Shown here in pieces: positions 27,206 to 38,280 of a DNA stretch of 64,000 bases. Position 1 is the first letter of the stretch. Each line of letters starts with the position of its first letter. The stretch lies in IMG/VR virus record IMGVR_UViG_3300009370_001221, positions 1-64,000 of that record. One strand, 5' to 3'. The notes under the pieces are model-generated. The model was not told the DNA's origin, did no database searches, and saw nothing but the letters and a program-made list of their open reading frames with translations. A program made the position numbers and the translations under genes.

Positions 27206-27760
27206 TTAATCTTCGTCTTGAAACTCTGCAGGATTTTCTTTATCATAATCCCACTTCATTTTATCTTTATCTAATTTTTTTATTGCTCGTTTTTTATATG
27301 CATCAAGTACACCAAGTTCTTTAGCACGAACAATAATTGCTTTTGCTATTTCTACTTCTTGTCTTGATGGTGGATTTGTTTTTGACCTGCCATTAAATGA
27401 CATTAATACATTTGCTATGTCATCATCCAATTGGCCAGGCACATCACGTAGCATATGTAATGCTATTGCCATATCACCTGCTTCGGCAGCTATTAAATTT
27501 GTACTTGTACCAACACCAAACTCGGCTGTTTTAATTCTTGACAACATATCATCATGACTAGATTGTCGAGCCGCTTGTTGTTTTTCTGCCTGGTAATCAG
27601 CAAAATCAGGAAAAGCCGTTACTAAACGATCAAGTTCTTTTTGTAATTTAGCAGGCGCCTTGCCAGTTTTTTCTTTAGCAATCTCTATTTCTTGATTGAG
27701 TTTTTCAATCTTTTTAGCAAGGCGATCTTTATTCTCAAGTATTACTTCATTAATTTTCAT
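27206..27760 (-). CDS. Hypothetical protein, possible internal head protein
   Basis: MKINEVILE N-terminal motif. Confidence 0.55.
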   Translation of the reverse strand: MKINEVILENKDRLAKKIEKLNQEIEIAKEKTGKAPAKLQKELDRLVTAFPDFADYQAEKQQAARQSSHDDMLSRIKTAEFGVGTSTNLIAAEAGDMAIALHMLRDVPGQLDDDIANVLMSFNGRSKTNPPSRQEVEIAKAIIVRAKELGVLDAYKKRAIKKLDKDKMKWDYDKENPAEFQDED

Positions 27761-28680
27761 TACTTATTAACGTTATCTTGATCAAATGCTTTAGGTTGTG
27801 TTGCATTTTTCTTCATCCACTTCAGTAAATTCGGCTTTGCTGTTTTAGTATTGCCTTTATTATACCATTCTGGACTATCATCACCTCTTTTTGGTGTGCC
27901 GCGGCCGATCAAGTTCCGGCCGCCGCCGATATCGCCACCGATAGGTTTTTCCATCTGTTGTCGGATCTTATCTAGCCAGTTCTGATCCATCGTCCCAGAG
28001 CCAATGCGTGTCGGCCGTTGTAAAATTCCTGGAGGAGGAGTGTTAGGCATTGCTTGTTTTCTATCCAACCCAGCATTCTTCATCATACTGTCCAATTGAT
28101 TTTGAAGTCCTGGACGAACGCCTTGTGCTGGTTTTGGTGTTGCATAACCTGGTGGAGGTGTGTTTGGACCACTTGCCACTTGTGTACCTGGTGGAGGAGT
28201 ATTTGGTAACTCCGCTACCTTTGTTCCTGGTGGAGGAGTATTTGGTAAATTACTTGGTTTTGGTGTTGCATAATTTCTACCTGGAGGGCCACTTGCTCCT
28301 GTACCTGCGGCTACTTGTTTAGGGGCATATCGTCCTGCTGGGCCATCTGCACCCGTGCCTGCGGCTACCTGTCTTGGTGCATAATTCCTTCCTGGAGGGC
28401 CACTTGCTCCTGTGCCTGCGGCTACCTGTCTTGGTGCATAATTCCTTCCTGGAGGGCCACTTGCTCCTGTGCCAGCGGCTGGTACCCTTGTCGGTGTCAT
28501 AATGCCAGCGGCGCCCATATTGCCGCCGCTTGGTCCTTCAGCGTCATGCTTAGGATCAAATTCACCACCACTTTGAAGATCTGGATCACCACCACCCAAT
28601 GCGGCTTTCTCGGCGCGCAATGCGGCAATTTGCTTATCAATTTCTTCAGCTCTACCTTCTAAAATTTGCTTAATTTTCAT
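27760..28680 (-). CDS. Gly/Pro-rich repeat protein, possible internal head protein
   Basis: MKIKQILEG N-terminus; four AAGTGASGPPGRNYAPRQV-like units and four PNTPPPG units. Confidence 0.65.
   Translation of the reverse strand: MKIKQILEGRAEEIDKQIAALRAEKAALGGGDPDLQSGGEFDPKHDAEGPSGGNMGAAGIMTPTRVPAAGTGASGPPGRNYAPRQVAAGTGASGPPGRNYAPRQVAAGTGADGPAGRYAPKQVAAGTGASGPPGRNYATPKPSNLPNTPPPGTKVAELPNTPPPGTQVASGPNTPPPGYATPKPAQGVRPGLQNQLDSMMKNAGLDRKQAMPNTPPPGILQRPTRIGSGTMDQNWLDKIRQQMEKPIGGDIGGGRNLIGRGTPKRGDDSPEWYNKGNTKTAKPNLLKWMKKNATQPKAFDQDNVNK
28260..28480 (-). repeat. About four coding tandem repeats (unit about 57 bp)
   Basis: CCTGGAGGGCCACTTGCTCCTGT..GCGGCTAC..G core repeated. Confidence 0.85.
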
Positions 28681-28709
28681 AATAATAAATCCAAGTATAT
28701 TTAATATAT

Positions 28710-29060
28710 TTATCTACTACCACCTGAATATTTAGTTGCAAAGCCATGTTCTACAAGGTAATTATTAAGATTTACTTCTTCTATCATAATTTCACCTAGT
28801 AATCTACCAAACTTACCTTTCTTATCCAAGTATGTTTTAATAACAACATTAGATCCTACTGGGCACATTTCTTGCACTTTTGCTTTAGCGGCGAGTCCTT
28901 TTTCTTTTTCTACTAAATCGCGTGTTCTACTTTCAGGGGCGTTGATACCTAATAAGCGAACTCGTTGCTTTTTAAGTATAATACTAAATCCTAAGTCAAT
29001 ATCAACATCTATTGTGTCACCATCTACAACACGATCTATTGTTGCAGGATACTCATACAT
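28710..29060 (-). CDS. Thermonuclease (SNase) family nuclease
   Basis: RVVDGDTID, RVRLLGINAPE and GKFGRLLG. Confidence 0.9.
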   Translation of the reverse strand: MYEYPATIDRVVDGDTIDVDIDLGFSIILKKQRVRLLGINAPESRTRDLVEKEKGLAAKAKVQEMCPVGSNVVIKTYLDKKGKFGRLLGEIMIEEVNLNNYLVEHGFATKYSGGSR

Positions 29061-29194
29061 TACTTTCCCTGCCCTCTATATTTTTTCCAACTGCGCTTTT
29101 TATGTTTGTTTGTTGGACGTGATCTTGTACTATTCCCTATAGATGTTTTCTTTTTAACATAGATTCTCTTTTGAAACCCTATACTTTTTGCCAT
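29060..29194 (-). CDS. 44-aa highly basic protein (KKYRGQG type seen in T4-like phages)
   Basis: Hand translation MAKSIGFQKRIYVKKKTSIGNSTRSRPTNKHKKRSWKKYRGQGK*; TAATG overlap. Confidence 0.7.
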   Translation of the reverse strand: MAKSIGFQKRIYVKKKTSIGNSTRSRPTNKHKKRSWKKYRGQGK

Positions 29195-29203
29195 GATTGA
29201 TTC

Positions 29204-30853
29204 CTAGTGTGGTCCTGGACGTGGAGATAACGTATTTGTCCCTGTTACGCCCGCTTTATTTTGTAATGCATCATCAAATACTTGACTATCTGCTAATGCT
29301 TTAGTAGCACCGGATAAACATTCTCCTAATGCTTTTTTAATTTCTGGATTTGCCATTTTAGATGACAATGAAGATGCAAACCCTGATAATGCACCTTGAC
29401 TTTGTATTTTTTTAGCCGCATCCGACATCGCTAAACTCATATCTTTCATCGTAGCATTTTCCTTTGTCATTATTGAAGTAATTTCACTAGCCGACGATTG
29501 CATAGCTGCACTGGCAGACGCGGCGGCCGCTTCAGCATCTGGTATTAATTTAGTTAATACTGCTTGTAAAGATGTTTGATCAGCTGCATCAGTTCCTAAT
29601 TCTACTTCAGCTGCTCCTGGCCCTGTTATTGTTTCACCAGTATCACTAGTTGATGTAACACTACTCCAATCTCCATTGCAGGCATTTGCTATATCTGAAA
29701 AAACTGTTGTACTAATGCCACTCATAGCACTTTTATAGTTCGTTAAAGCCGCATCCATTGGGCCATTTTTACCCATTACTGAACCCATGACATCTTTAAA
29801 CGTCTTTGCACCATTAGTTCCGCTACCACCACCAAATTGTGATGTTAAATTGGTAGCAGTTGCGGCAGTTACTTTTTCTGTTCCTGCTGGGAAATTAGGA
29901 TTTGCAGTGGCACTTAAATCTTTAACAACTGTTCCCATATCACTAGCAGTATTTAATTGTCCAAAATCATCACCAAAATCTTTAGTCATTGCTGAGAAGT
30001 TTTCTACTGCACCACCTGATGCTTTAGCATAATCCATAATATCACTACCTGATGTTAATGTAGCATCTGGTGTCTTTAATATTGTCTTTACTTCATCCAT
30101 TGCTTTAGAACTTTTAAGTGAAGAAAGAACAGATGTTGCTTGGGCAGATGTGATGCTATCTGTGTCTAAACTACCATGAGCCGCCATAAAAGCTGCTTTT
30201 GCTTCTACTGCATTACCTGCTATAAGTTTATCTACAACATCAACTGGATTTTGATCAAGTGGTAATTCTCCTAGTTTTGCTAAATTTGCTCCAGCCGTAG
30301 CACCACTAAATCCACCTTCAGGACCTCCTTCCATCATTGGGCCAAATTGTCCTGCTACTTTAGCAAGAGGAGAAGATACTGTTTCTGTAGCACCTACTAC
30401 AGCGGCATGCATTGCTTGAGCAGATTGTTCCATTGCTTGTTCCATTTGCCCAAAATTCTCAGCAAATTTTGATGGATCACCACCACCAAGTATTTTATCT
30501 GTATGTGCTTGAACTGAATCCATTAAAGTACCAGTATCTCCCAAACCACCGCCAGCAATTTTACTAGCTATTGATTTTAATTGGTCCGCTTGGGCGGATG
30601 GTATACCAAACATACCACCTTCTTGTCCGGTACATTCTAGATTAGCAATAGCATCTACCATATCTTTAGCGGCTTTCTGAATTGGCAATTCTTTAATAGA
30701 ATCTATTAATGCTTTGGTAGTTGTTGGCATAGCCAAACCATTACCTTCCATTAATTCTGCCAATGCTTCAGATTCTAAACATTTGTCTCCAACTTCGCAA
30801 CTGCCCTGGGCACCTACGCCGCCTTCTCCATAAATGCTTTCACCGCCTGCCAT
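29204..30853 (-). CDS. Ala/Ser/Gly-rich virion protein (baseplate/tail-associated)
   Basis: Composition and position directly after PAAR. Confidence 0.45.
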   Translation of the reverse strand: MAGGESIYGEGGVGAQGSCEVGDKCLESEALAELMEGNGLAMPTTTKALIDSIKELPIQKAAKDMVDAIANLECTGQEGGMFGIPSAQADQLKSIASKIAGGGLGDTGTLMDSVQAHTDKILGGGDPSKFAENFGQMEQAMEQSAQAMHAAVVGATETVSSPLAKVAGQFGPMMEGGPEGGFSGATAGANLAKLGELPLDQNPVDVVDKLIAGNAVEAKAAFMAAHGSLDTDSITSAQATSVLSSLKSSKAMDEVKTILKTPDATLTSGSDIMDYAKASGGAVENFSAMTKDFGDDFGQLNTASDMGTVVKDLSATANPNFPAGTEKVTAATATNLTSQFGGGSGTNGAKTFKDVMGSVMGKNGPMDAALTNYKSAMSGISTTVFSDIANACNGDWSSVTSTSDTGETITGPGAAEVELGTDAADQTSLQAVLTKLIPDAEAAAASASAAMQSSASEITSIMTKENATMKDMSLAMSDAAKKIQSQGALSGFASSLSSKMANPEIKKALGECLSGATKALADSQVFDDALQNKAGVTGTNTLSPRPGPH

Positions 30854-30856
30854 GTC

Positions 30857-31147
30857 CTATTCTCCTATAATAACGTCTTCACTGCCCACAGCACGTGGAT
30901 GGCCACAAGTATCTTTATCAATTTTAGTTCGCAATGCTGGCTTTCCTTCAATAATAACTGACTTACATGTTGATACAGTTTTAGCACTACAATGAGGTGG
31001 GGATGGTAATGGACAAGGTGCATGAGGAGTGACATCCATTTGAGGTATGCCTGCTTTTCGTCCATTAATTAAGACAGATTCAGCACCGCCTTGAGCGATG
31101 CCGCCTGCTGAATTAGGGTCTTTGTCCCGCTGTGCTTTCCATGCCAT
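30857..31147 (-). CDS. PAAR-domain baseplate spike-tip protein
   Basis: SVLINGRKA, VTPHAPC..PPH, SVIIEGKPALR..DKDTCGH..GSEDVIIG. Confidence 0.88.
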   Translation of the reverse strand: MAWKAQRDKDPNSAGGIAQGGAESVLINGRKAGIPQMDVTPHAPCPLPSPPHCSAKTVSTCKSVIIEGKPALRTKIDKDTCGHPRAVGSEDVIIGE

Positions 31148-31159
31148 ACTACTATTTAT

Positions 31160-31456
31160 TTAACTTGGCATGGCAAGACCAGTAGTTCCTTGGATATACT
31201 GGTCAGACATTTCTTTTCTTGTTGGTGCAATTACTATACAATTATGTTTAGAAAGAGTTACAGTGGTATCCATTTCCATTGTTAACATAAATTGACTAAT
31301 ACCTACACCTTGCGGTCCTACTTGTAGAGACATTGGCTTGTCTACTGTAATATGAGTATCTGTTTCTTCTTCAAATCTAGCAACTAATTCTTCACCAGTT
31401 ACTAACTTAATTGATATTACATCACCTTTTTTATGATTGATTTCGATTAACATCCA
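31160..31456 (-). CDS. Sm-like-fold small phage protein
   Basis: ISIKLVTGEELVAR...QYIQGTTGL. Confidence 0.55.
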   Translation of the reverse strand, partial: WMLIEINHKKGDVISIKLVTGEELVARFEEETDTHITVDKPMSLQVGPQGVGISQFMLTMEMDTTVTLSKHNCIVIAPTRKEMSDQYIQGTTGLAMPS

Positions 31457-32051
31457 TACTTTCCTTAAAAATTCTAATAGCACTATAACATATTAATAGG
31501 CCTATACCACCACCAATTACGACATCTGGTATATTGCTCTGCGTTAGTCCTACTAATATACCAGCAATAATAATACCAACACTTGATATGGCATCATTTC
31601 TACAACAAATATATGCACTCTTTAAATTAATGTCTTTATTTTTATAATATAACAATAACATAGCAGATGCTATATTACCTATTAATACAAAAACTCCTAC
31701 TAAAGTAATAGGCGTAGCATTAGGCACATATCCTGTTATTACATTTTGAATAACATACCATAACGCTAATATACCAAAACTTAACATTATTATTGCTTTT
31801 AATAATGCGACTTTTGCTTTTACTATCAGACTAGAACTCATAACAAATATACTGCCTAATAGGATTAAAGCATCACCTATATTATGAGCACTATCACCAA
31901 GTAAACTAGCAGAATGGGATATTACACCAAAATATAACTCAACAACAAACATCAACGCATTAATTAAAAAACATATAATTAAAGCATTGCGTTCACATGC
32001 GCCACATTCTTCTAAATCATGACAGTCATCGTCTAAACATATTCGAAACAT
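31431..32051 (-). CDS. Cation diffusion facilitator (CDF) metal transporter
   Basis: SASLLGDSAHNIGDA and DINLKSAYICCRND; Cys/His-rich N-terminus. Confidence 0.88.
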   Translation of the reverse strand: MFRICLDDDCHDLEECGACERNALIICFLINALMFVVELYFGVISHSASLLGDSAHNIGDALILLGSIFVMSSSLIVKAKVALLKAIIMLSFGILALWYVIQNVITGYVPNATPITLVGVFVLIGNIASAMLLLYYKNKDINLKSAYICCRNDAISSVGIIIAGILVGLTQSNIPDVVIGGGIGLLICYSAIRIFKESMDVNRNQS

Positions 32052-32284
32052 TATCCCAGTAGTAGAGTATCTGGTGTCTCCACTAGTCCATTAAATCCGC
32101 CTTCTACTAATCGATCATTGATATAAATTTGTGGAACGGTTCTATGACCTTGTTCCAAAATCCATTGGCGTGCTTCTAGATCTTGTTCGATATTTACCTC
32201 TTCATATGTTATATTTTTTGATTCTAGATACTGCTTTGCTCTTACGCAGAAAGCGCAAGAGTTCTTACTATAAATTTTGATCAT
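32051..32284 (-). CDS. Glutaredoxin
   Basis: CAFC, RTVPQIYI and GGF. Confidence 0.92.
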   Translation of the reverse strand: MIKIYSKNSCAFCVRAKQYLESKNITYEEVNIEQDLEARQWILEQGHRTVPQIYINDRLVEGGFNGLVETPDTLLLG

Positions 32285-32412
32285 ATTAAACCTTTCCAGT
32301 CTTTACTATGATCTACTTTGTGGCAATCACAGCCACAATCTTCACAGGTACAAATTCCTGTCTCATCGCATTTACAATCTGGATTAGTGCATCCACAATC
32401 CTTTTCTATCAT
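32281..32412 (-). CDS. 43-aa Cys-rich metallothionein-like protein
   Basis: Hand translation MIEKDCGCTNPDCKCDETGICTCEDCGCDCHKVDHSKDWKGLI*, 9 Cys in CxC motifs; ATGA overlaps with both nrdJ and glutaredoxin. Confidence 0.75.
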   Translation of the reverse strand: MIEKDCGCTNPDCKCDETGICTCEDCGCDCHKVDHSKDWKGLI

Positions 32413-34322
32413 ATTTCGCATCCTCCGGCTACACATGCTAATTCTTGACTGCTTGTAGTCATATCTTGTTGTTCATATTCGCTTAAAGTTTCCCAACTTA
32501 CATTTTTGGGCATACTTTGCATTGCTTGTTCATACTGTTCTTTAGTGCAATCTTGGTATGGTGCTTGCCGATACGTATGATCACTAAACGGTAAAAACGA
32601 TACACCAGACATTTGATCAAAGTGTTCATAAACCCACGCTCCGACCTCCAACCACTCGTGTTCTTTGACACTAATTGTTACTGAGGGTTTGTGTTCACAC
32701 CAATTATCTTGATAAATTTTCCATAATTCTAACTGTTCTATGGCTGTCATATCTTTTCTATAAACACCATATTGTGGCCCTTTCATTGGAAAGGAAAATA
32801 CTACAGTATGTTCTGGTTTTGTTACATCATCTTCTACAGGAAATCCTGCTTCTATCATCATTTTTGCTAATGGATCTTTTTTATCTGCTCTAACTGTTCG
32901 AATATAATATTGATTATGTCTTGCATGTATTCCACTTGCGCTATCTACTAATTGACTTACTGTACCTGATGGTTTTACACAAGTAATTGCAACAGATTGA
33001 TTAATACCAAGTCTCTTTGCCCAATCCTTATTAGTAGCAACAGCAACTTTTTTAAGTTCTGTGAGTAATTCCTCTAAACCTTTCTTTTTACCATTTGTTA
33101 ATGGATTATCCATAATACCTGTTAAAGAAACACCCAATAAACGCTCTTCATCACAATTCTGTAACCATCTCTTATTAAGATATCTAAAATTAGTAAGTGT
33201 TGATTGGAATGTGCCTAAAATAGTTGCATTAATAACTTTATCTTTTAATGTTTCAAAAGTATCGTTTGGACGAATTACTACTTCAGATAAATTACAAAAT
33301 TCTTCTGATCTTAAAATAATTTCACTGCAAGGGTTGGTGCCAAAATTATGATTTGGATCTCTACGTTCATTTTTGCCTGCTTGTTCTTTAGCGGCACGTC
33401 TGTTAAATATGCCACGCTCACCGGATTTGGACTCATAGAGAGATTTCCATTCTTCCATAAAAATACCAATATCAGGACGTTCAGTGTAACAAGCAGAATT
33501 ATTTGCTAATGCTCGTTGAGTTTGTGTTTCCCACCACTGTCCTGATTTTGCTAAACGCATTCTGTCGTCAGACAAATTTGACAAACTGATCAACGCAGAA
33601 CGCCTTACACCACCTACTACTACTATCTCCGCAATTTTACATGTAATATCATGACACTCTAAGGATGTTAGTCTACGTCCAGCGGCGCCTTTGAAAATAC
33701 CTACACAAAAATTAAATAAGTCTTCTAAAGGTTCTGGACCTGATGCTCTACCACCAAATGTTTTTAATGGAGAACCTGCGGCTCTAACTCGCGTCAAATC
33801 CCATACAGGAATTTGTCCGCCGTACAATAGATGAACTAATTCTTTGAGTGCTTTGGCCCAACCCAATTTAGAGTCACTTACTACAATAGTAGTTTCTGTT
33901 GGATAAAAATCATCAGCAACTCGGGGCATTTCATTAATCATTTGGCGTTCAACACTAAAGCCAACGCCCGTACCATTCATTAAGATATAAAGTATTTCGT
34001 CAAATGCACGTGGGTTATCAATTGCTACAAATGAACAATTATAACCCGCGACATTCTCGCGATGTAATGCCTCTCCAGCAGTCATAAGACAGCGCATAGA
34101 AGGCATTGTTTCTAAATTTAATACAGAATCTTGAAGTTTTTCTTTAAGATCTTTTGACAAATTATAACTACATGTCTCCTTTAAATGTTCTGCGAAGAAA
34201 GTAAAGTATCTGTCTACTGTTTCTTCCCATGTTTCTCGTCGATTGTCTTCATAACGGTAACGAGAGTATCTTGATAAATGAATGTATTGCTGGTATAGGG
34301 AGGGTAATTGATTATCTGCCAT
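32409..34322 (-). CDS. nrdJ: Class II (adenosylcobalamin-dependent) ribonucleotide reductase
   Basis: RETWEETVDRY, YNCSF, GGVRRSALISLS, TNPCSEI, CVKPSGTVS, C-terminal CVAGGC; no small subunit adjacent. Confidence 0.92.
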   Translation of the reverse strand: MADNQLPSLYQQYIHLSRYSRYRYEDNRRETWEETVDRYFTFFAEHLKETCSYNLSKDLKEKLQDSVLNLETMPSMRCLMTAGEALHRENVAGYNCSFVAIDNPRAFDEILYILMNGTGVGFSVERQMINEMPRVADDFYPTETTIVVSDSKLGWAKALKELVHLLYGGQIPVWDLTRVRAAGSPLKTFGGRASGPEPLEDLFNFCVGIFKGAAGRRLTSLECHDITCKIAEIVVVGGVRRSALISLSNLSDDRMRLAKSGQWWETQTQRALANNSACYTERPDIGIFMEEWKSLYESKSGERGIFNRRAAKEQAGKNERRDPNHNFGTNPCSEIILRSEEFCNLSEVVIRPNDTFETLKDKVINATILGTFQSTLTNFRYLNKRWLQNCDEERLLGVSLTGIMDNPLTNGKKKGLEELLTELKKVAVATNKDWAKRLGINQSVAITCVKPSGTVSQLVDSASGIHARHNQYYIRTVRADKKDPLAKMMIEAGFPVEDDVTKPEHTVVFSFPMKGPQYGVYRKDMTAIEQLELWKIYQDNWCEHKPSVTISVKEHEWLEVGAWVYEHFDQMSGVSFLPFSDHTYRQAPYQDCTKEQYEQAMQSMPKNVSWETLSEYEQQDMTTSSQELACVAGGCEI

Positions 34323-34481
34323 AGTTGAGATCCTTAATTATAATATCTATTATACAATAAAACGCTTTGATTGTCACGCCTTATATGTATATATCGAGAA
34401 AATGATATTTGAAGTATTTACCTGGTCTGTAACCAGATTATCCACGTGTTTAACATTTGCTAATATTAACTTCTAGGTATT

Positions 34482-36311
34482 TTAATTAATGATTTCTATT
34501 GCGTTTACAAACGAGGCCACGGTACCAGTGTTTGTAGTAGTATACTTCAACGTTGCAATACCACCACTATGAGTAACTGTAAACGAAACTCCAGTTGCGG
34601 CTGTTTCTTCATATTCATCACTAATACTTGATGCACCTGTTTTAATTGCTATATCTAAAGTACCTACTCTAGACTCTGAACCACGTGTAATTTTATAAGA
34701 AATTTTAACATCTTTTATTGAAGCTTCAGCAAAAGTAAGTCCAGTTGTAACAGCAGTTTGATTATCTGCCAATGTTATTGTTGTAGGAATACGTGCTTCA
34801 TGTTTACCCCATACTTGTTTTTCATTAGGTATATTGTAATAAACATCAGCATTATTTGTAGCAATTCTATCAAATGTTCCTACATCTCCATCTGGACGTT
34901 TAAAGTTATCTGAAATACTAGTACAATTAGATACATTTGAACTAGCATAGTTAATTACATCAGCAACAGCACTAGTAGTACCATCACCTGAGTTATTATT
35001 ACCTACATCATCAAATGTGTTGCCAACTGAATAAATGGCTGAACCATAGTCTACGTTAATGGCTTCATAATCTATATCACGAAATAAAGACCCCATTACT
35101 TTAAAACTTGTCGGGCCAGTTCCTGATGATGTTGATTCACCTAACCATATACCTCTGTTTGCAATGTCAAAATTACAATTTGTAAAATTAAAACCTTCAA
35201 TGGCGTCATTTGAATATACTCCAATTGGAACGCCCAAAAACTGACAATTGTTAAATGTAATATTTCGTGTTTTTAATGCATTTGTTTGTGTAACTTTTAC
35301 AGCAGCTGGTCTATCAGTACTATTTAAACCATCACCATTAGTATATGTGCCCATAAATGCCACATTTTCAAAATATGAATTAAGTGTTGAATCAATTTGA
35401 ATACAATCTTGTAGTAAATGTGTTGTATCTGTCGTTTTAATACATAGGTTGCTAACTACTAAACTCTGTGGTTGTATAGCACTGTTATTACCAATATTTG
35501 GTGCGATTTGATTTTTAGAATCTGATGTACGCATTACACAACTATCATGTCCTGCCGTTGTTGAAGAAGTAATAGTTACTGTAGCACTTGAATAACCTGA
35601 ACCACCATTTGTAACAGTAATTGCTGTAACTACTCCACCAACAATTGTTGCTGTTGCTGTTGCACTACTACCATCACCTGTAATTGTTACTACTGGAGCA
35701 GTTGTATAACCTGCACCACCAGCACTAACAGCAATACTCGCCACAGCACCTGAACTTAAAGTAGCGGTAGCAGTTGCATTAGTTTGTGTTTCATTATACT
35801 GTATAAGTGATTTACCTGGACCATCACCAAAAATAGTTGCCCAAGTTGGTATTTTTATTGGAGCAGTTACTTTATAAACACCTGCAGGGAAATATAAACT
35901 TCTACGTGCTTTTTGTGTAGTATCTTTAACAAACAATTCATACATTGCCCTATCAATTGCGGCGGTGTCATCTACTGAACCATTACCACTTGCACCAAAA
36001 TCCATTACACTAACATAATCATCTAACCTATCTTGCAATTTTCTAACAGTTGGTGCGCCTGCTGTGGCTCCTGTTTGAACTGTTGATGTTGCATTTCCCT
36101 CGTAAGTATAGTTTAACAATGACACAATATTACTGTGTTCTGTTAATACTTGTGTATTACCTACAATTGGCGCGCCGGCACTCGTTGGGCCGTTGCCAAT
36201 ATATAATTTACGAGAATCAGTAACCCAACCTAATTCTGCATGTGATAGTTGTGGAAGATTTGATTCCAATCCTCTACGATGTTGTATTCTTGAAATTTGT
36301 ACTATTGCCAT
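34482..36311 (-). CDS. Tail spike/fiber protein with beta-helix (pectate lyase 3-like) domain
   Basis: IQHRRG..LPQL..AELGW N-terminal module; SVMDFGASGNGSVDDTAAI and LYFPAGVY. Confidence 0.8.
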   Translation of the reverse strand: MAIVQISRIQHRRGLESNLPQLSHAELGWVTDSRKLYIGNGPTSAGAPIVGNTQVLTEHSNIVSLLNYTYEGNATSTVQTGATAGAPTVRKLQDRLDDYVSVMDFGASGNGSVDDTAAIDRAMYELFVKDTTQKARRSLYFPAGVYKVTAPIKIPTWATIFGDGPGKSLIQYNETQTNATATATLSSGAVASIAVSAGGAGYTTAPVVTITGDGSSATATATIVGGVVTAITVTNGGSGYSSATVTITSSTTAGHDSCVMRTSDSKNQIAPNIGNNSAIQPQSLVVSNLCIKTTDTTHLLQDCIQIDSTLNSYFENVAFMGTYTNGDGLNSTDRPAAVKVTQTNALKTRNITFNNCQFLGVPIGVYSNDAIEGFNFTNCNFDIANRGIWLGESTSSGTGPTSFKVMGSLFRDIDYEAINVDYGSAIYSVGNTFDDVGNNNSGDGTTSAVADVINYASSNVSNCTSISDNFKRPDGDVGTFDRIATNNADVYYNIPNEKQVWGKHEARIPTTITLADNQTAVTTGLTFAEASIKDVKISYKITRGSESRVGTLDIAIKTGASSISDEYEETAATGVSFTVTHSGGIATLKYTTTNTGTVASFVNAIEIIN

Positions 36312-36326
36312 ATCTATATTTATACT

Positions 36327-37607
36327 TTAACTGTAATTACAATTACTACAGGTTGAAGCACAAATATGTAAATTTCCATTTTTACTATTATATGGTGCAT
36401 TTACTGTTTGGAGAAATATATTTTCTGATGTATCTGGTTTCCAAGTTTGTTTGACAAGATTCATAAATCCACTATCAAATACTGCTTTAATACTTCCATG
36501 CTTTAATGCATCATTTACATCTTGTTGTAAGCCTGCGTATTTTAAAAGTTCTCGAGTATCATATGTATATTCATTTGCTATTCTTGTATGGTTCAATCCC
36601 ATCATGCAACATGGATATACATAACCATCTGCTGTAATAAAAATTCGTTGTAAATCAACTGCCATACAATCTATTTTACGATTCTCAATAAAACGAGCTT
36701 CTCCTCCACCACGTAAAATATTATTAATATCTACATTATCAAAATTATTAGTAATATTGGCATATCCACCTAAATAACCTTCAAGCCAAGATTTCTCTGT
36801 AATATCTTTCTCCCAAGACTTTTCTTGATTTAAATATTTTTTACTGACAATTTTACCAAATTCTATTGTTTGTTTCATATCAACAGTATGCCCATCAAGT
36901 GCATCTACATTAGTATTTTCTTTTAAATTTGTTGTAGCATTCATATAACCATATTCATCTATAGTTGAGTCTTCCAATTGTCCAACATATACTCCTTTGT
37001 TATCCATAACAGGAGTACCATTAGGACGATCTGATTTAATAACATCAATATTATTAAAATTATATGCTTTAGCTAATCTTTTTACTTCTTCTAATTGATG
37101 TTGATTATGCTTAAACAATATAAATTGCCAACATGCATTTCCTCCAGCATCAATAAATGCTGTTGCATTACTTAATACTTTAAGATAACTTGTATTACGC
37201 CTATAAAACGAATGCACTTCTTCTGTAGTGCCATCAATTGCCCATATTATTTTCATCCCTTTACCATACTTTGCAAACTCTGCCCAATAATGTTGCTCAT
37301 ACATTGAACCATTAGTATTGAGGGTTGCCCAAATCTCTGGATTAACACTAAACAAATATTCTACCATATCGTGCAAATAAGGATTCATTTGGGCATCACC
37401 CAGATTACCACAAAAACTTATATCGTTTAATTGTTGCAAAAATTCTTCGGGCAATAGTATTTTAAACTGCTCAAGTGTCATATTGCCTTTATATATACCG
37501 GGTTTTGCCCCATAACCAAAATAATTTCGCGGACAGGCAGGACAAGCGGCATTGCACCGCTCTGTTATTTCTATTTGAACACTTTTAATATCGTTGAGAT
37601 TATACAT
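36327..37607 (-). CDS. Radical SAM/SPASM-domain protein
   Basis: CNAACPAC, FCGNLGD, NTNGS, IDG and GYVYPCC; start reassigned to MYNL. Confidence 0.88.
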   Translation of the reverse strand: MYNLNDIKSVQIEITERCNAACPACPRNYFGYGAKPGIYKGNMTLEQFKILLPEEFLQQLNDISFCGNLGDAQMNPYLHDMVEYLFSVNPEIWATLNTNGSMYEQHYWAEFAKYGKGMKIIWAIDGTTEEVHSFYRRNTSYLKVLSNATAFIDAGGNACWQFILFKHNQHQLEEVKRLAKAYNFNNIDVIKSDRPNGTPVMDNKGVYVGQLEDSTIDEYGYMNATTNLKENTNVDALDGHTVDMKQTIEFGKIVSKKYLNQEKSWEKDITEKSWLEGYLGGYANITNNFDNVDINNILRGGGEARFIENRKIDCMAVDLQRIFITADGYVYPCCMMGLNHTRIANEYTYDTRELLKYAGLQQDVNDALKHGSIKAVFDSGFMNLVKQTWKPDTSENIFLQTVNAPYNSKNGNLHICASTCSNCNYS

Positions 37608-38280
37608 TATAATACTGGGCGACTTTATCATTCCAACCTTCAGCCACGGTGTCAAACTCCTCACCTTCAATAACAAATTCTTGATATGTTAAATCACGAC
37701 TGCACATTAGTATAACTCCAGTATTTATTTCTGTATCAAACATCTCATTATGAGCCTGAGCATAAGCAGTAAGTTGGCAAAAGTAATCATCAACCCATTC
37801 TCTTTTCTTTGGTTTATTTGTTTGCTTAAAATCTAAAATTGCTAACTTACCATTCCATAAACCAACACAATCTGTTGTGCCGGCATATAAACCACTGGCA
37901 TACAACGAAACTTCTGTGCCATATATCTCTGCTACTTGCCTAAAACCTTCCGCTATAATAACATTAGACATACTATATGCTTGCTGATGTATTTGATTAC
38001 TGCCTACTTTTCTCTTTTCACTGTTAATGTATAATTCTAAATTTTTATGCATTAACGTGCCAACATTAGCAGCTTCTGTAGTAATTTGCTGTGCTTGCTC
38101 TGTGCCAACACGCTTTCTCCAATTTGCTAATGCTTCTCTTTTTTCTTTTGATTTTGTTGCATCTAGTATAGTTGTAACACTAGGAACACTTGAGCCATCA
38201 GGTAACTTATAATGGCGTTTTCTGTCTATTGTTGTTACTCTGTCAATAGGAGAGTATTCGTATTTCTCTAATAATAGCAT
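37600..38280 (-). CDS. PD-(D/E)XK exonuclease (phage Cas4-like family)
   Basis: PSVTTIL, GTLMH, YAGTTDC, ILDFKQ and QLTAYA. Confidence 0.88.
   Translation of the reverse strand: MLLLEKYEYSPIDRVTTIDRKRHYKLPDGSSVPSVTTILDATKSKEKREALANWRKRVGTEQAQQITTEAANVGTLMHKNLELYINSEKRKVGSNQIHQQAYSMSNVIIAEGFRQVAEIYGTEVSLYASGLYAGTTDCVGLWNGKLAILDFKQTNKPKKREWVDDYFCQLTAYAQAHNEMFDTEINTGVILMCSRDLTYQEFVIEGEEFDTVAEGWNDKVAQYYNV

What the first reader, a model, noticed from the sequence alone, without database searches (positions are those of the whole stretch)
31431..34322. B12-dependent RNR operon containing a hidden metallothionein-like peptide and a CDF metal transporter
Seen: nrdJ, a 43-aa 9-Cys peptide, glutaredoxin and a CDF transporter are joined by ATGA/TAATG overlaps. 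The peptide is absent from the ORF track, and the CDF has a Cys/His N-terminus (CLDDDCHDLEECGAC). Established: NrdJ needs adenosylcobalamin and thiol reduction; CDFs move Zn/Co/Cd; CxC-rich peptides bind soft metals. Inference: a phage metal-buffering module that protects RNR thiols or manages cobalt/zinc during replication.
Basis: partly seen in the sequence, partly recalled or inferred. Interest (0 to 1): 0.65.

Follow-up and report, generated by a model that had tools for sequence, protein, structure and literature searches.

The report
Phage RNR string with cysteine peptide
A marine jumbo phage encodes, in one tightly coupled gene string, a B12-dependent ribonucleotide reductase, a glutaredoxin, a short metal-efflux transporter and, in one young sublineage only, a real 43-residue peptide with nine cysteines that looks like a metallothionein but has no known relatives and no measured function.

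Summary
On the minus strand lie nrdJ (32409-34322), a 43-codon 9-Cys/2-His ORF (32281-32412), a glutaredoxin (32051-32284) and a 206-aa CDF transporter (31431-32051). They are joined by ATGA, ATGA and TAATG overlaps.

The peptide is very probably a real gene. It has a GGAGGA ribosome site 8 nt upstream. Five DNA variants keep the frame through in-frame indels. pN/pS is 0.16-0.33. Every Cys and His is kept while Cys codons switch TGT/TGC.

It is also young and dispensable. It forms one sublineage nested among relatives where nrdJ abuts grx directly or where a 362-aa gene fills the same slot. A profile search of 1.84 billion proteins found no relatives, and it matches no Pfam metallothionein family.

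The CDF belongs to the already described C-terminal-domain-lacking class. It is common in bacteria and archaea and rare in viruses. Its N-tail carries four Cys, and its transport site reads His-Asp/Cys-Asp instead of His-Asp/His-Asp. It is linked to nrdJ-grx only in relatives of at least 73% identity.

The "metal-buffering module for RNR" reading is plausible but untested. No metal, binding or direction of transport is shown.

The parts
34349..34377 (-). Sigma-70-like promoter candidate (GTGACA-17-TATAAT, 11 of 12) in the 159-nt gap upstream of nrdJ
   Evidence: This is the best-scoring of 30 promoter-like sites in 28600-36500. The total count of sites is not above shuffled expectation, so only its position supports it.
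32409..34322 (-). nrdJ: monomeric-type adenosylcobalamin-dependent ribonucleotide (triphosphate) reductase, 637 aa, with a C-terminal Cys-x4-Cys tail
   Evidence: phrog_367 E 1.9e-189. TIGR02505 RTPR 331.5 bits against a cut-off of 340. PF02867 and PF21995 weak. The C-terminal Cys pair is read from the translation.
32421..32426 (-). Shine-Dalgarno GGAGGA, 8 nt before the peptide ATG, inside the last codons of nrdJ
   Evidence: Read from the sequence. The same site precedes grx in relatives that lack the peptide.
32281..32412 (-). 43-aa Cys9His2 peptide gene: four CxC pairs plus one further Cys within 25 residues, then an invariant His-x3-His and a Trp-containing tail
   Evidence: ATGA overlaps at both ends. 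pN/pS is 0.16-0.33. All Cys and His are kept in the variants that retain the column (the 35-aa variant has lost two Cys columns in an in-frame deletion). 4 of 9 Cys columns carry synonymous TGT/TGC changes, and indels are in frame. No family or relatives were found outside the clade.
32051..32284 (-). Glutaredoxin, 77 aa, with a dithiol Cys-x-x-Cys active site
   Evidence: PF00462 E 5.9e-21. TIGR02181, TIGR02196 and NrdH-like models score below their cut-offs.
31431..32051 (-). CDF metal transporter, 206 aa, six TM helices, no cytoplasmic C-terminal domain
   Evidence: PF01545 73.6 bits. AF2 model pLDDT 86 with six helices. Foldseek match to YiiP at TMq 0.82, rmsd 2.0.
31995..32039 (-). Cytoplasmic N-tail of the CDF with four conserved Cys (C5, C10, C16, C19) and acidic residues
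   Evidence: Invariant in 7 phage relatives down to 68% identity. Absent from the nearest bacterial homologues.
31872..31895 (-). TM2 half of the transport site: D53, H56, D60
   Evidence: H56 and D60 align to ZnT8 H106 and D110, the positions mutated in the D110N/D224N entry. Invariant.
31593..31607 (-). TM5 half of the transport site: Cys-Cys-Arg-Asn-Asp. C149 stands in the place of the usual site-A His; D153 is kept.
   Evidence: Aligned to ZnT7 and to ZnT8 H220/D224. C149, R151, N152 and D153 are invariant in 59 homologues.
31160..31483 (-). Next gene of the same string (about 97-107 aa, unknown function). It overlaps the CDF 3' end and is conserved downstream of the CDF in relatives.
   Evidence: phrog_527 E 2.6e-10. 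A 96-aa gene follows the CDF in L113.

Best explanation
This is part of a long co-directional gene block of a marine jumbo phage. The window record is 235 kb and 67% complete; a relative of 323 kb is 90% complete.

nrdJ and grx form an ordinary phage dNTP-supply pair: a monomeric-type B12-dependent reductase and the dithiol protein that re-reduces its C-terminal Cys pair.

The gene translationally coupled behind them is a six-helix CDF antiporter of the known class that lacks the cytoplasmic C-terminal domain. It carries a cytosolic four-Cys acidic N-tail and a His-Asp/Cys-Asp transport site. Inferred: it inserts into the host inner membrane and pumps a thiophilic divalent metal (Zn, Cd or Co type) out of the infected cytoplasm in exchange for protons.

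In one recent sublineage a 129-nt gene was inserted exactly at the nrdJ|grx junction. It encodes a cytoplasmic 43-residue peptide whose 9 Cys and 2 His are under purifying selection. Inferred: it folds only around a metal-thiolate cluster, like a metallothionein domain, and buffers metal or hands it on.

Shown here: the gene identities, the coupling, the coding status and selection of the peptide, its single recent gain, the fold of the CDF and the residues of its site, and the synteny pattern.

Inferred only: metal binding, which metal, direction of transport, and any benefit to RNR thiols or to the phage's many Fe-S and B12 enzymes.
For: Identities.

Junctions and ribosome site.

Peptide coding status: pN/pS 0.16-0.33, against 0.06-0.19 for its neighbours. 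Further variants of 44, 42 and 35 aa carry in-frame indels in the same slot. No Cys or His is replaced, 4 of 9 Cys columns show synonymous change, and all 13 variable columns lie between the ligands.

Single gain: the peptide-bearing genomes group together (89/92 support) inside peptide-less ones.

CDF: pLDDT 86, six helices, no C-terminal domain. YiiP TMq 0.82. Site residues come from three independent ZnT alignments, including the D110N/D224N mutant entry.

Metal-efflux role of the family: cellular homologues sit beside a MerR-type metal regulator, an RND pump and a full-length CDF. Reviews describe this CTD-lacking class with a Cys/Asp/Glu/His-rich N-tail proposed to chelate metal (PMC8341793, PMC6465983).

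Synteny: nrdJ-grx-CDF is kept in at least 5 distinct lineages of 73-100% CDF identity.

RNA: library contigs of 90-95% relatives cover nrdJ, the grx/CDF junction and the whole CDF.

Metallothioneins characteristically have no fixed fold without metal (PMC3323870). This is compatible with the low-confidence, structure-free AF2 model of the peptide.
Against: The peptide matches no metallothionein family at E up to 10 and has no relatives anywhere else, so 'metallothionein-like' rests on composition alone.

It is missing from close relatives, so the module works without it.

No RNA-library contig covers it, and there are no protein data.

The most conserved part is the non-Cys C-terminal tail. 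That fits a docking motif as well as it fits extra ligands.

The CDF is unlinked from nrdJ/grx in relatives of 71% identity or less.

Free zinc in seawater is picomolar (PMC3323870), so the need for efflux is not obvious.

The effect of a Cys in site A on selectivity is unknown. The reviews I read list only His/Asp/Asn quartets.
Confidence: 0.55

Rival explanations
1. The CDF is an independent auxiliary gene of this phage group, and its place behind nrdJ-grx is positional only. Its job relates to the infected cell in general, for example shielding the phage's 13-19 radical SAM (Fe-S) and B12 enzymes from thiophilic metals, not to RNR.
For: In relatives of 50-71% CDF identity the gene lies elsewhere, with no NrdJ or Grx within 3.5-6 kb. 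In L112 and L125 it directly adjoins a radical SAM gene. The genomes carry 13, 19 and 14 Radical_SAM matches and B12-binding radical SAM genes. Junction overlaps are common genome-wide.
Against: The TAATG coupling to grx is kept in every relative of 73% identity or more, including lineages that changed the gene upstream of grx. With one radical SAM gene per roughly 17 kb, a neighbour within a few kb is not clearly more than chance.
Confidence: 0.4
2. The peptide is a zinc-structured thiol relay or adaptor between glutaredoxin and NrdJ. It would be a small trans-acting analogue of the cysteine-rich domain that most non-monomeric class II reductases carry, and that Pseudomonas encodes as a separate gene (nrdJb).
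For: It sits exactly between nrdJ and grx, with overlaps on both sides. There is precedent for a separately encoded Cys-rich Zn domain needed for turnover (PMC5704485). The invariant C-terminal tail could be a docking motif.
Against: The known domain is 150-220 aa with six Cys in CxxC spacing and never occurs with monomeric NrdJ. This peptide is 43 aa with CxC spacing. NrdJ here already has its own C-terminal Cys pair. Close relatives do without the peptide.
Confidence: 0.12
3. The peptide is a precursor of a ribosomally made, radical-SAM-modified peptide (thioether cross-links of the sactipeptide or ranthipeptide type).
For: A radical SAM/SPASM gene lies two genes upstream (36327-37676) and the genome has at least 13 radical SAM genes. 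Small Cys-rich precursors of about 45 aa are typical of such systems (my own knowledge).
Against: The SPASM gene is separated from the peptide by a tail-fibre-like gene. Its orthologue is kept in lineages that never had the peptide (G001, G004). The peptide has no leader: the first Cys is residue 6. The peptide was gained once, long after the radical SAM genes.
Confidence: 0.07
4. The 43-codon ORF is a recent insertion without a function of its own. It would be kept open merely because it carries the ribosome-site-to-start spacing for grx.
For: It is young, clade-restricted, without homologues and dispensable. There is no RNA or protein evidence. The comparison rests on few sequences.
Against: pN/pS is well below 1. 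Three separate in-frame indels occur. There are zero replacements at 11 ligand positions despite 13 variable columns and synonymous Cys changes. Relatives show that grx needs no such spacer.
Confidence: 0.08

Closest known systems
CTD-lacking CDF transporters (class noted by Kolaj-Robin et al. 2015, as cited in PMC6465983 and PMC8341793)
   Same: Six-helix Cation_efflux domain only, no cytoplasmic dimerisation domain, and an N-terminal tail rich in Cys/Asp/Glu/His. Common in marine and soil bacteria. At least 538 genome matches to the family motif.
   Different: This one is encoded by a phage; only 19 loci were found in 2.9 million viral contigs. The four-Cys N-tail is specific to the phage clade and a few close bacterial relatives (P0055, P0057 and P0058 keep three of the four Cys). 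I did not find the Cys at the site-A His position discussed in the reviews read.
ZnT8 / ZnT7 / YiiP (structurally solved Zn-CDFs)
   Same: Same transmembrane fold (TMq up to 0.82). TM2 His-x3-Asp and TM5 x-x3-Asp align to the transport site.
   Different: The quartet is His-Asp/Cys-Asp instead of His-Asp/His-Asp (ZnT) or Asp-Asp/His-Asp (YiiP). There is no C-terminal domain and no His-rich loop. Sequence identity is 14-20%.
Metallothionein domains (mammalian beta-domain M3Cys9; cyanobacterial SmtA/BmtA, recalled as Zn4Cys9His2)
   Same: Small size; 9 Cys within 25 residues, arranged as CxC pairs; no aromatic residue inside the Cys region; two conserved His next to the Cys block. The ligand counts of the two known proteins are recalled from my own knowledge. 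They are a lead, not a test.
   Different: No sequence homology to any Pfam metallothionein family. The spacer residues are acidic rather than Lys/Ser-rich. There is a conserved Trp-containing tail. No BmtA-type zinc-finger fold is predicted. Metal binding is untested.
Phage nrdJ-glutaredoxin/thioredoxin pairs
   Same: A class II reductase followed by its small dithiol reductant, as annotated in many marine phages (Roseobacter, Methylophilales and Puniceispirillum phages among the nrdJ matches).
   Different: Here a transporter, and in one sublineage a Cys-rich peptide, are translationally coupled into the pair.
NrdJ cysteine-rich domain / NrdJb (PMC5704485)
   Same: A Cys-rich, Zn-binding element that is genetically separable from the catalytic subunit of a class II reductase.
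   Different: 150-220 aa with six Cys in CxxC spacing; never found with monomeric NrdJ. The peptide is 43 aa with CxC spacing and sits next to a monomeric-type NrdJ.

Membership tests
Class II ribonucleotide reductase, monomeric type (NrdJm / RTPR) | Match to the RTPR equivalog model and to the phage RNR family | tested here: inconclusive
   TIGR02505 scores 331.5 bits, just under its 340.05 cut-off. phrog_367 E 1.9e-189 over residues 5-637. It is clearly a class II RNR; the exact subclass is near the threshold.
Class II ribonucleotide reductase, monomeric type (NrdJm / RTPR) | C-terminal redox-active Cys pair on a flexible tail, and no cysteine-rich domain | tested here: met
   The translation ends with Cys-x4-Cys three residues before the stop. 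There is no long Cys-rich extension.
Glutaredoxin | Glutaredoxin domain above the Pfam threshold with a CxxC active site | tested here: met
   PF00462 scores 74.9 bits against 22.9. Cys-Ala-Phe-Cys at residues 10-13.
Cation diffusion facilitator | Cation_efflux domain and a six-helix fold | tested here: met
   PF01545 scores 73.6 bits against 26.6. The AF2 model has six helices at pLDDT 86. Foldseek top hits are all ZnT/YiiP.
Cation diffusion facilitator | Four-residue transport site A from TM2 and TM5, usually made of His/Asp/Asn | tested here: inconclusive
   Three of four positions are canonical (H56, D60, D153). The fourth is Cys149 where ZnT7/ZnT8 have His. It is invariant in 59 homologues. 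Function of such a site is untested.
Cation diffusion facilitator | Cytoplasmic C-terminal (ZT_dimer) domain | tested here: not met
   The protein ends 6 residues after TM6 and has no PF16916 match. This places it in the CTD-lacking class, not outside the CDF superfamily.
CTD-lacking CDF class | No CTD, plus an N-terminal tail rich in Cys, Asp, Glu and His | tested here: met
   Residues 5-20 hold 4 Cys, 1 His and 7 Asp/Glu. The class description is in PMC8341793.
Metallothionein (operational definition) | Small protein, high Cys content in CxC/CxxC motifs, few aromatic residues | tested here: met
   43 aa with 9 Cys (21%). Four CxC pairs. One Trp, lying outside the Cys block.
Metallothionein (operational definition) | Binds several metal ions in thiolate clusters | not testable with these tools
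   Needs ESI-MS or ICP-MS on the purified peptide.
Known metallothionein families (Pfam, including bacterial BmtA type) | Sequence match to a family model | tested here: not met
   Three variants gave no Pfam metallothionein hit at E up to 10. Nothing in NCBIfam or PHROGs. Profile search of 1.84 billion proteins found only the peptide's own clade.
NrdJ cysteine-rich domain / NrdJb | 150-220 aa with six conserved C-terminal Cys in CxxC spacing | tested here: not met
   The peptide is 43 aa with CxC spacing. The domain description is in PMC5704485.
Radical-SAM-modified peptide precursor (RiPP) | Co-occurrence and adjacency with its maturase; a leader region | tested here: not met
   The SPASM orthologue is present in genomes without the peptide. 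A tail-fibre-like gene lies between them. There is no leader before the first Cys.

The most novel reading that the evidence does not exclude
The peptide is the first phage-encoded metallothionein. It would work as a soluble metal donor for the four-Cys N-tail of a CTD-less CDF whose transport site uses a cysteine: a virus-borne chaperone-plus-exporter pair. The peptide would substitute in trans for the missing metal-sensing C-terminal domain. The pair would clear thiophilic metal released during host breakdown, protecting the phage's thiol, Fe-S and B12 enzymes.
Probability: 0.15. Interest if true: 0.7.

Novelty: new variant of a known kind. Interest (0 to 1): 0.5.

Why it matters
Phage auxiliary genes for trace-metal handling are little documented. 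This CDF type occurs in only 19 of 2.9 million viral contigs, and the viral structure library holds no phage CDF fold.

If the transporter and the peptide act on metal, infection by an abundant marine jumbo phage would include active re-setting of the host's metal pool. The phage is seen in seawater metagenomes of at least 13 studies.

The peptide is also a clean case of a very young orphan gene under selection, inserted at a junction that has accepted three different states.

Separately, the Cys-containing transport site marks a large, uncharacterised family of short CDFs in bacteria and archaea. The phage gene offers a compact test case for it.

Tried and rejected
No binding claim is made.

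2. AF2 on the peptide with 6 sequences gave pLDDT 62 and no secondary structure. It is not usable for fold search.

3. The ESM Atlas feature search of the peptide scored 0.81 or less, with only unnamed clusters. No lead.

4. phmmer of the single CDF against PDB gave nothing at E 0.001. Profiles were needed.

5. RNA evidence: only Logan contigs were available. They cover nrdJ, grx and the CDF of 90-95% relatives but leave 32208-32510 empty. This is no evidence against transcription, because those relatives may lack the peptide and contigs drop rare variants. DNA carry-over in RNA libraries is also not excluded.

6. Literature searches for phage or viral metallothionein and for phage-encoded CDF found nothing specific. 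The library lacks most subscription journals, including the Kolaj-Robin 2015 review itself.

7. The RiPP idea was tested by co-occurrence and rejected as unsupported.

8. The idea that the peptide is an NrdJ cysteine-rich domain in trans was compared with the published description and does not fit.

9. Terminator scan: no convincing terminator between nrdJ and the genes after the CDF.

Full report
WHAT IS THERE

The window is the first 64 kb of a 235-kb IMG/VR virus record that is estimated 67% complete. A close relative of 323 kb is 90% complete. The DNA occurs in marine and seawater metagenomes of at least 13 studies. GC content is 34.8%. Nearby genes include DnaB-like and other helicases, a tail-fibre-like protein, a PAAR-like protein and a nuclease. 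This is a marine jumbo phage.

All four genes of the finding lie on the minus strand:
- nrdJ, 32409-34322
- a 43-codon ORF, 32281-32412
- grx, 32051-32284
- a CDF gene, 31431-32051

The best promoter-like site of the region (11 of 12 positions) lies in the 159-nt gap before nrdJ. No convincing terminator follows the CDF, and another small gene overlaps its end. The four genes are therefore part of a longer string. Such overlaps are common in this genome, at 11 of 66 same-strand junctions.

THE TWO ORDINARY GENES

NrdJ matches the phage RNR family at E 1.9e-189. It matches the adenosylcobalamin-dependent triphosphate reductase model at 331.5 bits, just under the 340 cut-off. It ends in a Cys-x4-Cys tail. 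According to PMC5704485, that is how monomeric class II enzymes receive electrons from thioredoxin or glutaredoxin. The 77-aa protein is a dithiol glutaredoxin (PF00462, 74.9 bits). This pair is a standard phage dNTP-supply unit.

THE PEPTIDE IS A REAL GENE

A GGAGGA site lies 8 nt before its ATG. Relatives yielded five DNA variants and one further protein variant, of 35 to 44 aa, always in the same slot.

- Among window, L006 and L008, pN/pS is 0.16-0.33. For comparison it is 0.06-0.07 for nrdJ, 0.10-0.14 for grx and 0.09-0.19 for the CDF.
- Four of the nine Cys columns carry TGT/TGC changes, and none carries a replacement.
- All 13 amino-acid-variable columns lie between the Cys and His positions.
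- The three indels (1, 1 and 8-9 codons) are in frame.
- The upstream ATG of the 51-aa reading is not conserved.

Cys richness alone would not be enough. Cys is 1.16% of residues in the window's genes, yet two antisense small ORFs are equally Cys-rich.

THE PEPTIDE IS YOUNG AND DISPENSABLE

Relatives L005, L009, L010 and L113 have nrdJ running straight into grx through a TAATG overlap. They use the same ribosome site. The L011 lineage has an unrelated 362-aa gene in the slot. On a tree of NrdJ+Grx+CDF, the three peptide-bearing genomes group together (89/92 support) and are nested within peptide-less ones, so one recent gain is the simplest history. The peptide is single-copy and is absent from the 202-kb and 77-kb contigs of the L011 lineage.

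THE PEPTIDE HAS NO RELATIVES

There is no Pfam match at E up to 10, and none in NCBIfam or PHROGs. The word search of 5.8 billion proteins and the full HMMER profile search of 1.84 billion representatives returned only its own clade. The Atlas gave no lead. AF2 gave pLDDT 62 and no secondary structure.

WHAT THE PEPTIDE LOOKS LIKE

Nine Cys lie within 25 residues as four CxC pairs plus one more Cys. The spacers are acidic, and there is no signal sequence. A His-x3-His and an invariant Trp-containing tail follow.

By composition this is metallothionein-like. I recall a nine-Cys count for the mammalian beta-domain, and nine Cys plus two His for cyanobacterial SmtA. That recollection is a lead only. 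PMC3323870 notes that metallothioneins have no defined fold without metal and that their small ORFs are easily missed in annotation.

The tail is the most conserved part of the peptide. It could supply extra ligands or a docking motif; I cannot tell which.

THE CDF

It is 206 aa, with six helices at pLDDT 86 and nothing after TM6. It superposes on the YiiP membrane domain at TMq 0.82 and rmsd 2.0 A.

Profile alignments to ZnT7, human ZnT8 and Xenopus ZnT8 put H56 and D60 on the TM2 site residues. They put C149 and D153 on the TM5 His and Asp. The D110N/D224N mutant entry marks exactly these columns. The site is therefore His-Asp/Cys-Asp.

C149, R151, N152 and D153 are invariant in 59 homologues down to 33% identity. 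The motif found at least 538 confirmed matches in bacterial and archaeal genomes. In cultured species the homologues lie next to a MerR-type regulator, an RND pump and a full-length CDF. This fits metal efflux.

Reviews already describe CTD-lacking CDFs with a Cys/Asp/Glu/His-rich N-tail and call their function unclear. The four-Cys tail (C5, C10, C16, C19) is invariant in the phage clade and missing from the nearest bacterial homologues.

In viruses the family is rare: 19 loci in IMG/VR, nearly all from this phage group. No phage CDF fold appears in BFVD. PHROGs does hold a cation-efflux family, phrog_7308.

IS THE MODULE CONSERVED?

nrdJ-(peptide | nothing | 362-aa gene)-grx-CDF is kept in every relative with 73% CDF identity or more. 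At 68-71% (L016, L114) and at 50-61% (L020, L112, L125, L128) the CDF lies elsewhere, with no NrdJ or Grx within reach. In several of these it lies beside radical SAM genes.

These phages carry 13, 19 and 14 Radical_SAM matches plus B12-binding radical SAM genes. At that gene density, such neighbours are not clearly more than chance.

RNA-library contigs of 90-95% relatives cover nrdJ, bridge the grx/CDF junction and cover the whole CDF. None covers the peptide. These are contigs, so they show neither level nor strand, and DNA carry-over is possible.

INTERPRETATION

I take nrdJ+grx as a working pair. I take the CDF as a co-expressed metal exporter of the infected cell. I take the peptide as a recently acquired cytoplasmic metal-thiolate peptide that is useful but not required.

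The idea that it protects RNR thiols or manages cobalt is only one of several possible benefits. Protection of the phage's many Fe-S and B12 enzymes is at least as plausible, and the loose linkage of the CDF to nrdJ favours a general role.

Rivals for the peptide were considered. A Zn-structured relay between Grx and NrdJ does not match the published cysteine-rich domain. A radical-SAM-modified precursor does not co-vary with the SPASM gene. A functionless spacer is contradicted by the selection pattern.

VERDICT

This is a new variant of known kinds: a phage-borne CTD-less CDF with a Cys-containing site, plus an orphan metallothionein-like peptide. The decisive evidence is biochemical and is listed under next steps.

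Noticed in passing
whole record G000 (window 36327-37676 is one copy); G002, G001: These marine jumbo phages carry very many radical SAM genes: 13 matches in the 67%-complete window genome, 19 in the 90%-complete relative and 14 in a third. B12-binding radical SAM genes are present in two of them.
   Followed up: partly
window 32281-32412 slot; L011:4683-5771; L005, L009, L010, L113: The nrdJ|grx junction exists in three states among close relatives: direct TAATG overlap, the 43-aa peptide, or an unrelated 362-aa gene with no Pfam family. It looks like a hot spot for gene insertion.
   Followed up: partly
L020 (JGI 3300032820 contig, 24.7 kb), also L021, L022: A 58%-identical CDF homologue lies in a cluster of several radical SAM and B12-binding radical SAM genes, a PEP mutase/isocitrate-lyase-family gene, an Asp/Arg hydroxylase-like gene and an aminotransferase. 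This may be a phosphonate-type biosynthetic island in a related phage or a cell.
   Followed up: no
L027-L106 (genome loci), e.g. L059, L062, L081: A large, apparently uncharacterised family of ~200-aa CTD-less CDFs with an invariant Cys-[Cys/Ser]-Arg-Asn-Asp motif in TM5 occurs across many bacterial phyla and in marine archaea. Some members lie next to MerR-type regulators, RND pumps or full-length CDFs.
   Followed up: partly
window 27760-28680 (-): A 306-aa protein is built largely of Gly/Pro-rich tandem repeats: repeated AGTGASGPPGRNYAP-like units and NTPPPG units. No family was assigned here.
   Followed up: no
window 34482-36311 (-) and 30857-31147 (-): Structural genes flank the metabolic string. 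Upstream is a tail-fibre-like protein with an Mtd_N tip domain and a pectate-lyase-like domain. Downstream is a 96-aa PAAR-like protein, below the Pfam threshold.
   Followed up: no
phage record DQ115834.1 (Cyanobacteria phage AS-1 fragment): The only cultured-phage match to the CDF is an unannotated 1.5-kb fragment of cyanophage AS-1 (36.6% identity over 65% of the query). The other four hits are contigs labelled Acinetobacter phage MD-2021a that carry czcD/zitB-annotated genes.
   Followed up: no
L023, L024 (bacterial contigs): The nearest cellular homologues of the phage CDF (47-49% identity) sit in a conserved housekeeping neighbourhood (FtsH, pterin-binding enzyme, BipA, short-chain dehydrogenases, DUF1802) of an unclassified marine bacterium. 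That lineage may be related to the host or to the gene's donor.
   Followed up: no
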